Shown here: one piece after another, positions 44,307-44,497 of the stretch
Layout of the letters: each line of letters opens with the position of its first letter
How positions within the stretch are numbered: the stretch's first letter is position 1
Origin: Octopus sinensis
Lineage: Eukaryota
Assembly: GCF_006345805.1 (NCBI RefSeq)
Contig: NC_043004.1
Span: 22,320,001-22,384,000 of the forward strand
Length of the DNA stretch: 64,000 nucleotides
Direction of reading: 5' to 3'
Notes under the pieces: generated by a model
Told to the model about the DNA's origin: nothing
Seen by the model: only the letters and a program-made list of their open reading frames with translations
Databases searched by the model: none
Translations under genes and position numbers: made by a program

Positions 44307-44366
44307 ACTCTTTTACTGTTTTACTTGTTTCAGTCATTTGACTGCGGCCATGCTGGAGCACCGCCT
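44307..44366 (-). mobile_element. SINE family A 3' tail fused downstream of the 5S copy
   Basis: Reverse strand AGGCGGTGCTCCAGCATGGCCGCAGTCAAATGACTGAAACAAGTAAAACAGTAAAAGAG. Confidence 0.9.
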
Positions 44367-44378
44367 ATATAAAGGGAA

Positions 44379-44497
44379 TGCTTACAACACCTAGGTTTCC
44401 CAAGCGGTCACCCATCTAAGTACTAACAAGGCTCGATGTTGCTTAACTTCGGTGATCAGACGAGAACCGGTGCTTTCAACGTGATATGGCCGTAAGC
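44379..44497 (-). rRNA. Full-length 5S rRNA copy, probably a retroposed pseudogene
   Basis: 119 nt, GCTTACGGCCATATCACGTTGAAAGCACCGGTTCTCGTCTGATCACCGAAGTTAAGC...TTAGTACTTAGATGGGTGACCGCTTGGGAA...TGTAAGCA; single copy, no T4 terminator immediately downstream. Confidence 0.92.

What the first reader, a model, noticed from the sequence alone, without database searches (positions are those of the whole stretch)
44307..44497. 5S rRNA fused to the 3' tail of a tRNA-derived SINE
Seen: a complete 119-nt 5S on the minus strand followed after about 12 nt (TTCCCTTTATAT) by the last 60 nt of SINE family A, with no four-T terminator in between. Established: 5S-headed SINEs (SINE3) exist in other animals, and RT template switching yields small-RNA/retroposon chimeras. 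Inference: either a member of an unrecognised 5S-derived SINE family borrowing the family A tail, or a one-off template-switch chimera. The upstream flank (GCTCACAACCATATG) weakly resembles the SINE A head, so insertion into a SINE is a third option.
Basis: partly seen in the sequence, partly recalled or inferred. Interest (0 to 1): 0.75.

Follow-up and report, generated by a model that had tools for sequence, protein, structure and literature searches.

The report
5S rRNA fused to SINE tail
A complete 5S ribosomal RNA copy is joined to the short 3' tail that the commonest SINE of this cephalopod-like window carries, a known kind of retroposon; no accessible data showed whether it is one copy of a family or a one-off.

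Summary
Window 44379-44497 (minus strand) is a full-length 5S rRNA sequence (Rfam RF00001, 105 bits; only two consensus pairs broken). It is followed by 12 nt (TTCCCTTTATAT) and then about 61 nt (44306-44366). Of these, 47 nt are identical to the 3' tail of the window's abundant tRNA-like SINE ("SINE A"). The 192-nt unit has no run of four T.

The shared tail begins exactly at the foot of two small hairpins and ends in a GTAAAAnA repeat. I read this, by analogy with known LINE/SINE pairs, as the part a partner LINE's reverse transcriptase recognises. SINE A body sequence is absent on the other side of the 5S, so simple insertion of 5S into a SINE is not supported.

The architecture matches 5S-headed SINEs (SINE3; HaSE3, which shares its 3' region with tRNA-derived HaSE1) and template-switch chimeric retrocopies.

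I could not count copies. None of the DNA collections holds octopus DNA, as positive controls showed. Published octopus repeat tables list automatically classified "SINE/5S" families, which weakly favours a family.

Verdict: a real chimeric retroposon of a known kind. Family member 0.5, one-off chimera 0.33. Modest interest.

The parts
44379..44497 (-). Full-length 5S rRNA-derived head (119 nt). It starts at 5S nucleotide 1 and ends at the native 3' end ...GUAAGCA.
   Evidence: Rfam RF00001, 105.2 bits, model 1-120, not truncated. 32 of 34 consensus pairs are standard. Seven CpG are kept.
44367..44378 (-). 12-nt linker TTCCCTTTATAT. The first TT could be the U-tail of a mature 5S transcript. 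The remainder has no assigned origin and contains no T4 terminator.
   Evidence: Read directly. Not homologous to the SINE A sequence that precedes the tail. Unique in the window. Weak likeness to CCTTC(C/A)A(T/A), which precedes the tail in two older SINE A-like copies.
44346..44365 (-). Tail hairpin 1 (GGC.GUGC-UCCA-GCAU.GCC). Homology to SINE A starts one base 5' of its foot.
   Evidence: MFE fold of the tail, z -2.6 here and -3.0 in a SINE A copy. 94% of cells paired across 7 tails, with one G-C to A-U double change; not significant with 7 sequences.
44331..44344 (-). Tail hairpin 2 (CAGUC-AAAU-GACUG).
   Evidence: one C-G to U-A double change among 7 tails.
44306..44330 (-). A-rich 3' end with two GTAAAAnA units (AAACAAGTAAAACAGTAAAAGAGTA). 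This is the terminal simple repeat of the tail; the number of units differs between copies.
   Evidence: Alignment of 7 tails: copy 18799-19232 also has two units and the others have one. The motif is enriched in the window, 7 matches against 0.28 expected.
44498..44512 (-). 5' flank GCTCACAACCATATG. Not part of the element as far as can be shown. It resembles the first 14 nt of the 5S itself (11 of 14, all differences transitions).
   Evidence: p about 0.011 against the 5S 5' end. p about 0.13 against SINE A heads. Unexplained.
60147..60530 (+). Comparator, not part of the element: a SINE A copy whose tail is identical to the element's tail over 47 nt. Other full copies lie at 46307-46670 and 18799-19224.

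Best explanation
The 192-nt unit is a retroposed chimera: a whole 5S rRNA sequence joined at its native 3' end to the 3' tail that the window's dominant tRNA-like SINE carries.

Shown: the three parts, their exact boundaries, the absence of a Pol III terminator between head and tail, and the absence of SINE A body on either side.

Inferred origin: a reverse transcriptase of the partner LINE started on a tail-bearing RNA (SINE A or the LINE itself). It copied the terminal GTAAAAnA repeats and the two hairpins, then switched template to the 3' end of a 5S rRNA and copied it to nucleotide 1.

Inferred consequence: 5S genes carry their Pol III promoter internally, and no T4 lies before the tail. 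A copy like this can therefore be transcribed through its tail and be mobilised again, which is how SINE3-type elements work.

My best guess is that this copy belongs to such a 5S-headed SINE family using the same LINE partner as SINE A, rather than being the only product of one switching event.
For: - Full-length 5S with native ends and a nearly intact structure.
- The tail is identical to SINE A tails over 47 nt. Homology starts at the foot of a two-hairpin module kept in all 7 tails of the window.
- The element has its own number of terminal repeat units. That fits an independent retroposition event rather than a rearrangement.
- No T4 in the unit.
- No SINE A sequence upstream of the 5S.
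- Precedent: HaSE3, a 5S head on the 3' region of tRNA-derived HaSE1, with an RTE partner that ends in a simple repeat.
- Octopus repeat annotations list SINE/5S: 4 consensus families covering 9.83 Mb in O. vulgaris. Another study gives 0.030-0.039% of repeat families' relative frequency in O. bimaculoides and O. vulgaris, plus SINE/5S-Core-RTE in O. bimaculoides.
- 9.83 Mb in 2.8 Gb predicts about 225 bp per 64 kb, and 192 bp are seen.
- Inference: a genuinely unique element would almost never fall in a randomly chosen 64-kb window.
Against: - Only one copy is in the window, and copies elsewhere could not be counted.
- The 5S part is so close to an intact 5S that it shows no demonstrable family-specific diagnostic changes. 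I had no octopus 5S gene to compare it with.
- The element has no body, so by itself it looks like a chimeric pseudogene.
- The published SINE/5S classes are automatic labels and may partly be 5S rDNA arrays. The 'recently active' 5S class has 7 insertions covering 42 kb, about 6 kb each.
- No significant target-site duplication.
- How the window was chosen is unknown, so the density argument is weak.
Confidence: 0.5

Rival explanations
1. One-off chimeric retro-pseudogene. It forms by the same template switch (tail-bearing RNA to mature 5S rRNA during target-primed reverse transcription), but the product was never transcribed and copied again. This corresponds to 5S/LINE-1 and U6/LINE-1 chimeras in mammals.
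For: - Exact mature-RNA ends of the 5S, plus two T that could be its U-tail.
- Near-intact 5S structure and a tail with 0 of 47 differences, as expected for a single event from functional RNAs.
- No body sequence, and a single copy in the window.
- Such chimeras are documented and are mostly non-propagating.
Against: - Ten nt of the linker (CCCTTTATAT) are explained by neither partner.
- The breakpoint coincides with the edge of the hairpin module, which a random switch along a roughly 400-nt SINE RNA would rarely hit.
- The chance of meeting a unique element in 64 kb is tiny.
- Octopus annotations list SINE/5S classes.
Confidence: 0.33
2. Two independent events that happen to be adjacent. A solitary 5S gene copy or pseudogene was later hit, 12 nt downstream and in the same orientation, by a severely 5'-truncated SINE A (or LINE) copy of which only the tail remains.
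For: - LINE-driven copies are often 5'-truncated.
- CTTTATAT before the tail resembles CTTAATAT, which lies 6 nt after it.
- An A/T-rich box (AATTTAATAA) lies at -29 to -20 of the 5S, where some invertebrate 5S genes have an upstream element. This is read and the comparison is from my own knowledge.
Against: - The other six SINE A-type tails aligned from the window all follow SINE-body sequence; none stands alone.
- Same orientation, a 12-nt distance and truncation exactly at the hairpin module all have to coincide.
- The candidate duplication is not adjacent to the tail end and is AT-rich.
- It leaves the dispersed full-length 5S itself unexplained.
Confidence: 0.08
3. A 5S retrocopy inserted into a pre-existing SINE A, with loss of most of the SINE.
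For: The upstream flank ends in CAACCATATG, which is also found in SINE A heads.
Against: - The flank similarity is at chance level (p about 0.13).
- The sequence immediately upstream of the 5S is not the SINE A sequence that precedes the tail.
- The model needs an extra deletion of about 300 bp.
Confidence: 0.03
4. Assembly artefact joining a 5S read to a SINE read.
For: None specific. Repeats are where assemblies fail.
Against: - There is no shared sequence at the junction that could cause a false join.
- The 12-nt linker and both flanks are unique sequence.
- There are no N runs.
Confidence: 0.02

Closest known systems
HaSE3 of Helicoverpa armigera (5S rRNA-derived SINE that shares its 3' region with tRNA-derived HaSE1; partner LINE HaRTE1)
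   Same: A 5S head sits on the 3' part of a co-resident tRNA-derived SINE. Origin was proposed to be template switching from the SINE RNA to 5S rRNA. The partner LINE's 3' end is a simple repeat. HaSE3 is much rarer than the tRNA SINE.
   Different: HaSE3 keeps the body as well as the tail of HaSE1, and its 5S part has diverged outside the promoter boxes. Here only the roughly 61-nt tail is shared and the 5S is complete and nearly intact. HaSE3 was shown to be multi-copy by PCR and database hits; here copy number is unknown.
SINE3 (5S rRNA-derived SINEs; Kapitonov and Jurka 2003, zebrafish; later other fishes, some mammals, beetles and Lepidoptera)
   Same: The head comes from 5S rRNA with its internal Pol III promoter. 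No terminator follows the head, and the 3' tail is shared with a LINE.
   Different: SINE3 families normally have a body between head and tail and are defined on many copies. Neither holds or is known here. No mollusc SINE3 description turned up in my literature searches; I found only automatic SINE/5S labels.
Chimeric retrocopies made by LINE template switching (U6/LINE-1, 5S/LINE-1 and similar; Buzdin et al. 2003)
   Same: A small Pol III RNA is fused 5' of, and in the same sense as, the 3' end of a retroelement. For U6 the small RNA is full length.
   Different: [quoted passage not shown] The partner here is a SINE-type tail with hairpins and a simple repeat, not L1 with poly(A). Human chimeras carry target-site duplications; none could be shown here.
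'SINE/5S' and 'SINE/5S-Core-RTE' classes in published octopus repeat annotations (Bonar et al. 2026; PMC8967140, 2022)
   Same: Same kind of host genome, and the 5S head is classed as SINE. The Core-RTE label fits a 5S head on a SINE A-like backbone. The genome-wide density of the 2026 annotation predicts about one such element per 64 kb.
   Different: The labels are automatic and may include 5S rDNA arrays.

Membership tests
SINE (SINEBase definition, PMC3531059) | Short (<1 kb), interspersed, non-tandem repeat | tested here: met
   192 nt, solitary, no tandem 5S neighbours in 64 kb.
SINE (SINEBase definition, PMC3531059) | At least 60% identity to tRNA, 5S rRNA or 7SL RNA over at least 60 nt | tested here: met
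   Full-length match to the 5S model at 105 bits.
SINE (SINEBase definition, PMC3531059) | [quoted passage not shown] | not testable with these tools
   The junction pattern and a SINE A tail control both gave 0 hits in the metagenome and genome collections, and the tail control gave 0 in the viral one, so none of them holds octopus DNA. The protein route also failed.
SINE (SINEBase definition, PMC3531059) | Distinct from an RNA pseudogene: extra non-RNA sequence, or diagnostic changes shared with a source copy and absent from the cellular gene | tested here: inconclusive
   Extra sequence (linker plus tail) is present. Diagnostic substitutions cannot be judged without other copies and without the species' 5S rDNA.
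SINE3 (5S-headed SINE) | 5S-derived head retaining the internal promoter region (boxes A, IE, C) | tested here: inconclusive
   The whole 5S, including positions 50-97, is present. This copy carries changes at 61 and 70 inside that region. Promoter activity is not testable here.
SINE3 (5S-headed SINE) | No Pol III terminator between head and tail | tested here: met
   No TTTT in the 192 nt.
SINE3 (5S-headed SINE) | 3' tail shared with a partner LINE | tested here: inconclusive
   The tail is shared with SINE A and is structured. No LINE 3' end carrying it is present in the window, so the partner is not identified.
Template-switch chimeric retrocopy | Small RNA with exact mature ends fused in sense to the 3' part of a retroelement | tested here: met
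   5S model positions 1-120 complete, same strand as the tail. However, 10-12 nt at the junction are unexplained.
Template-switch chimeric retrocopy | One target-site duplication flanking the whole chimera | tested here: inconclusive
   The best candidate, CACAACCATATG / CACGACTTAATATG, is not above chance (p about 0.27). SINE A copies in the window also lack clear duplications, so absence says little.

The most novel reading that the evidence does not exclude
This is a copy of a young, body-less 5S-headed SINE family of octopods that has not been characterised. It would have been born when the recognition hairpins of the dominant tRNA-CORE-type SINE (or of its LINE) were joined to a whole 5S rRNA. 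That would be the first dissected SINE3 of molluscs and a nearly unmodified snapshot of SINE birth by head swapping.
Probability: 0.45. Interest if true: 0.4.

Novelty: new member of a known kind. Interest (0 to 1): 0.3.

Why it matters
Octopus genomes are unusually rich in SINEs. How new SINE families arise there is of interest for genome evolution and for repeat annotation.

This is a minimal element: an intact 5S, then the two-hairpin tail, then the terminal repeat. If it is multi-copy, it would delimit how little of the tail the partner LINE needs, and it would document head replacement at an early stage.

If it is a one-off, it only shows that the octopus LINE machinery makes the same small-RNA chimeras as mammalian L1. 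Either way it is a variation on well-described mechanisms.

It also carries a practical warning: such copies can be mislabelled as 5S rRNA genes.

Tried and rejected
1. Copies of the junction elsewhere. The pattern GTTGTAAGCA-N(4-24)-AGGCGGTGCTCCAGC gave 0 hits in metagenome contigs and genome contigs. The positive control, a 26-nt SINE A tail, also gave 0 in the metagenome, viral and genome collections. The nulls are therefore uninformative.

2. Independent assemblies or orthologous loci through neighbouring ORFs. Three exact look-ups were not on record.

3. Protein-level search with the only open frame that crosses tail, junction and 5S. It returned two unrelated 5S-antisense ORFs.
   - A LINE ORF from the window found only 4 weak relatives, so the protein collection holds almost no octopod genomic ORFs.
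   - Two Logan contigs (L004, L005) carry a SINE A-like piece and a 70%-identical LINE, but no 5S.

4. Target-site duplication. Neither a whole-element nor a tail-only duplication is above chance.

5. 5' flank as SINE A head: rejected.

6. Partner LINE in the window. The 3' regions downstream of the LINE ORF fragments at 57.5-57.9 kb and 23.7-24.1 kb do not carry the tail, and a further motif hit at 21097-21111 is unrelated sequence.

7. 'The 5S part is older than the tail': rejected. A first impression of about 8 decayed positions shrank to two broken pairs. The A81-U95 pair was read by eye against a metazoan 5S recalled from memory, and it looks like a compensated, probably native variant.

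8. Sequence strings searched in paper texts: no hit.

9. The many sub-threshold 'miRNA' hits are TA/TG microsatellites.

Full report
**What is there**

The window contains exactly one 5S rRNA sequence, at 44379-44497 on the minus strand. It matches Rfam RF00001 at 105.2 bits against a gathering score of 38, covers model positions 1-120 and is not truncated. A permissive scan of the whole window found no second 5S or fragment. Its other hits are TA/TG microsatellites scoring below threshold for miRNA models. ARAGORN finds no tRNA gene.

Mapping the sequence onto the Rfam consensus structure, 32 of 34 pairs are standard; the exceptions are C17.A61 and U70.U105. Seven CpG are retained. Reading helix IV by eye against a metazoan 5S recalled from memory, position 81-95 is A-U where G-C is usual. 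That looks like a compensated and therefore probably native variant rather than decay. The 5S part is thus close to a working 5S rRNA.

Directly 3' of the 5S come 12 nt, TTCCCTTTATAT (44367-44378). After them comes AGGCGGTGCTCCAGCATGGCCGCAGTCAAATGACTGAAACAAGTAAAACAGTAAAAGAGTA (44306-44366).

A 47-nt stretch of this tail is identical to the 3' end of a repeat copy at 60479-60525, with zero matches in 100 shuffles. It is about 380-430 bp long and consists of:
- a tRNA-like head with a B-box-like GGTTCAGTCCC;
- a segment that I recall as resembling the CORE domain (memory only, not tested);
- a TA/TG microsatellite;
- a body;
- this tail.

Full copies lie at 18799-19224, 46307-46670 and 60147-60530, with partial or older copies elsewhere. 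Homology between the 5S element and SINE A begins at AGGCGG (possibly TA.AGGCGG) and runs to the end of the SINE. The sequence before it is unrelated to the SINE A body.

The 192-nt unit contains no TTTT, and the first T4 lies 171 nt downstream.

**The tail as a module**

The tail RNA folds into two small hairpins: GGC.GUGC-UCCA-GCAU.GCC and CAGUC-AAAU-GACUG. An unpaired A-rich end made of GTAAAAnA units follows. The folding z-score is -2.6 in the element and -3.0 in a SINE A copy.

Across the seven tails in the window, 94% of pair cells are standard pairs and two pairs show changes on both sides. With seven related sequences this is not significant (54 of 500 shuffles reach it). I therefore treat the structure as consistent with the data, not proven.

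The number of terminal units varies between copies: two in the 5S element and in copy 18799-19232, one in the others. From general knowledge of LINE/SINE pairs that share a 3' tail (the eel UnaL2/UnaSINE1 work cited), such variation is what reverse transcriptase slippage at initiation produces.

The 5S element retains exactly hairpins plus repeat and nothing more of SINE A.

**What the flanks say**

No SINE A sequence lies upstream of the 5S. The 15 nt abutting the 5S share only CAACCATATG with SINE A heads, which is at chance level (p about 0.13). Simple insertion of a 5S copy into a resident SINE is therefore not supported; it would need an additional deletion of about 300 bp.

I found no significant target-site duplication. 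The best whole-element candidate, CACAACCATATG / CACGACTTAATATG, is matched or beaten by about 27% of random pairs. The three full SINE A copies in the window also lack clear duplications, so this absence carries little weight.

One oddity remains unexplained. The 14 nt upstream of the 5S (GCTCACAACCATAT) resemble the first 14 nt of the 5S itself (GCTTACGGCCATAT). They match at 11 of 14 positions, all differences are transitions, and p is about 0.011.

**The linker**

If the first two T are the U-tail of a mature 5S transcript, ten nt (CCCTTTATAT) are left without an origin.

Two older SINE A-like copies have CCTTCAA or CCCCTTCCAT immediately before their GCGGTGC/GCGATGC. The linker may therefore belong to a longer version of the tail, as might be found in the partner LINE. 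The match is too short to test here, and no LINE 3' end with this tail is present in the window.

**Mechanism**

The anatomy is what template switching during LINE-driven reverse transcription yields. Synthesis starts on a tail-bearing RNA and passes the repeats and hairpins. It then jumps to the 3' end of a 5S rRNA and runs to its 5' end. This origin is proposed for HaSE3 and for composite 5S/tRNA SINE heads, and it is one of two proposed routes to U6/L1 and 5S/L1 chimeras.

The product keeps the 5S internal promoter region and has no terminator before the tail. A transcript of it would therefore again carry the tail and could be mobilised again, which is the working principle of SINE3 elements. 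These steps are inferred; none could be tested here.

**Family or one-off?**

This is the open question, and it needs octopus genomes, which I could not reach.
- The junction pattern gave no hit in the metagenome or prokaryotic genome collections.
- A 26-nt SINE A tail used as positive control also gave none in the metagenome, viral or genome collections. These nulls say nothing.
- Three neighbouring ORFs are not on record.
- The only frame open across tail, junction and 5S retrieved two unrelated 5S-antisense ORFs.
- A LINE ORF from the window had only four weak relatives. Two of them lie on Logan contigs that do carry a SINE A-like piece (89% identity) and a 70%-identical LINE, but no 5S.

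The literature gives indirect evidence.
- A 2026 repeat annotation of O. vulgaris lists a SINE class '5S' with four consensus families covering 9,831,953 bp. That is 0.35% of the genome, or about 225 bp per 64 kb; 192 bp are seen here.
- A 2022 comparison (PMC8967140) lists SINE/5S at 0.030% (O. bimaculoides) and 0.039% (O. vulgaris) in a table of relative frequencies of repeat families. It also lists SINE/5S-Core-RTE at 0.021% in O. bimaculoides. If those percentages refer to copy counts, they would mean roughly one to three thousand copies.
- These are automatic labels. In the 2026 paper the 'recently active' 5S class has 7 insertions covering 42 kb, about 6 kb each. That looks more like 5S arrays than SINEs, so the class may be mixed.

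I weigh four points for a family:
- these tables;
- the improbability of meeting a unique element in 64 kb;
- the unexplained linker;
- the breakpoint lying exactly at the module edge.

Against a family I weigh:
- the near-intact 5S;
- the absence of a body;
- the single copy in the window.

My estimates are: family member 0.5, one-off chimera 0.33, two adjacent independent events 0.08, 5S inserted into a SINE 0.03, assembly artefact 0.02.

**Comparison with what is known**

The closest described case is HaSE3/HaSE1 in a moth. The class is SINE3, and the formation mechanism is that of chimeric retrocopies.

Against the SINEBase criteria:
- size, interspersion and similarity to 5S are met;
- copy number is untestable here;
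- the distinction from a pseudogene is only half met, because extra sequence is present but diagnostic substitutions are unknown.

I therefore do not file it as a proven SINE. I describe it as working like one.

My literature searches found no characterised 5S-derived SINE of cephalopods or other molluscs, only the automatic labels.

**Verdict**

This is a real, cleanly delimited 5S-tail chimeric retroposon of a known kind. Its interest is modest, and its status as family member or singleton is decidable with one BLAST against an octopus assembly.

Noticed in passing
window 44498-44512 (minus strand): The 14 nt immediately upstream of the 5S (GCTCACAACCATAT) resemble the 5S's own first 14 nt (GCTTACGGCCATAT). 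They match at 11 of 14 positions, all three differences are transitions, and p is about 0.011. This could be a remnant of a partial 5' duplication, microhomology at the 5' junction, or chance.
   Followed up: partly
window 44030-44191 (minus strand); also 12997-13157, 21453-21583, 15568-15693, 1618-1778: A second SINE family ('SINE B', GCCGGGCGAAATGCTTAGCGG...GGTTCAAATTCCACCGAGGTCGAC...) with at least five copies. One lies about 115 nt downstream of the 5S element in the same orientation. Its tail is different from that of SINE A.
   Followed up: partly
window 19861-20560 and 6319-7036 (minus strand): Older SINE A-like copies split by long TA/TG/GA microsatellites and other insertions. Their tails differ before the first hairpin (CCCCTTCCAT, CCTTCAA), hinting at a longer ancestral, possibly LINE-derived, tail.
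   Followed up: partly
window 46267-46310: The SINE A copy at 46307 is preceded by a partial duplicate of its own head (GTGTGGCTGTGTGGTATAGGCGCAG then ACGTGGCTGTGTGGTAAG).
   Followed up: no
window 23561-24450 (minus strand); loci L004 and L005: A LINE ORF2 C-terminal fragment (weak zf-RVT match) is 70% identical over about 900 bp to two Logan contigs (SRR11869384, SRR11869391). These contigs also end in a SINE A-like piece, so they come from a related octopod-like genome.
   Followed up: partly
window 43296-43681 (+), 31168-31410 (-), 57274-57866 (+): Further decayed LINE fragments. 31168-31410 gives a weak RVT_1 match. 43296-43681 and 57477-57866 gave no Pfam match, and I read them as reverse-transcriptase and ORF2 C-terminal fragments by eye. 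The first lies about 0.6-1 kb from the 5S element on the opposite strand. The 3' region after the 57-kb fragment lacks the SINE A tail.
   Followed up: partly
window 52152-52574 (-) and 31805-32062 (+): Tc1/mariner transposase fragments: an N-terminal HTH region (HTH_Tnp_Tc3_2, E 6e-07) and a C-terminal piece.
   Followed up: partly
window 59132-59840 (+): Two open stretches (88 and 119 aa) look like coding sequence by composition but have no Pfam match. They could be an unknown transposable-element gene or a host exon.
   Followed up: partly
window-wide, e.g. 62495-62578, 3320-3403, 39100-39700: Dozens of sub-threshold Rfam 'miRNA' hits (mir-3149, mir-297, mir-1277 and others) all fall on TA/TG microsatellites and are artefacts. 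Microsatellites fill a large share of the window.
   Followed up: yes
window 44633-44700: An (ATTAT)n microsatellite lies about 135 nt upstream of the 5S element. Similar arrays occur at 51253-51322, 713-783 and 6559-6639.
   Followed up: no
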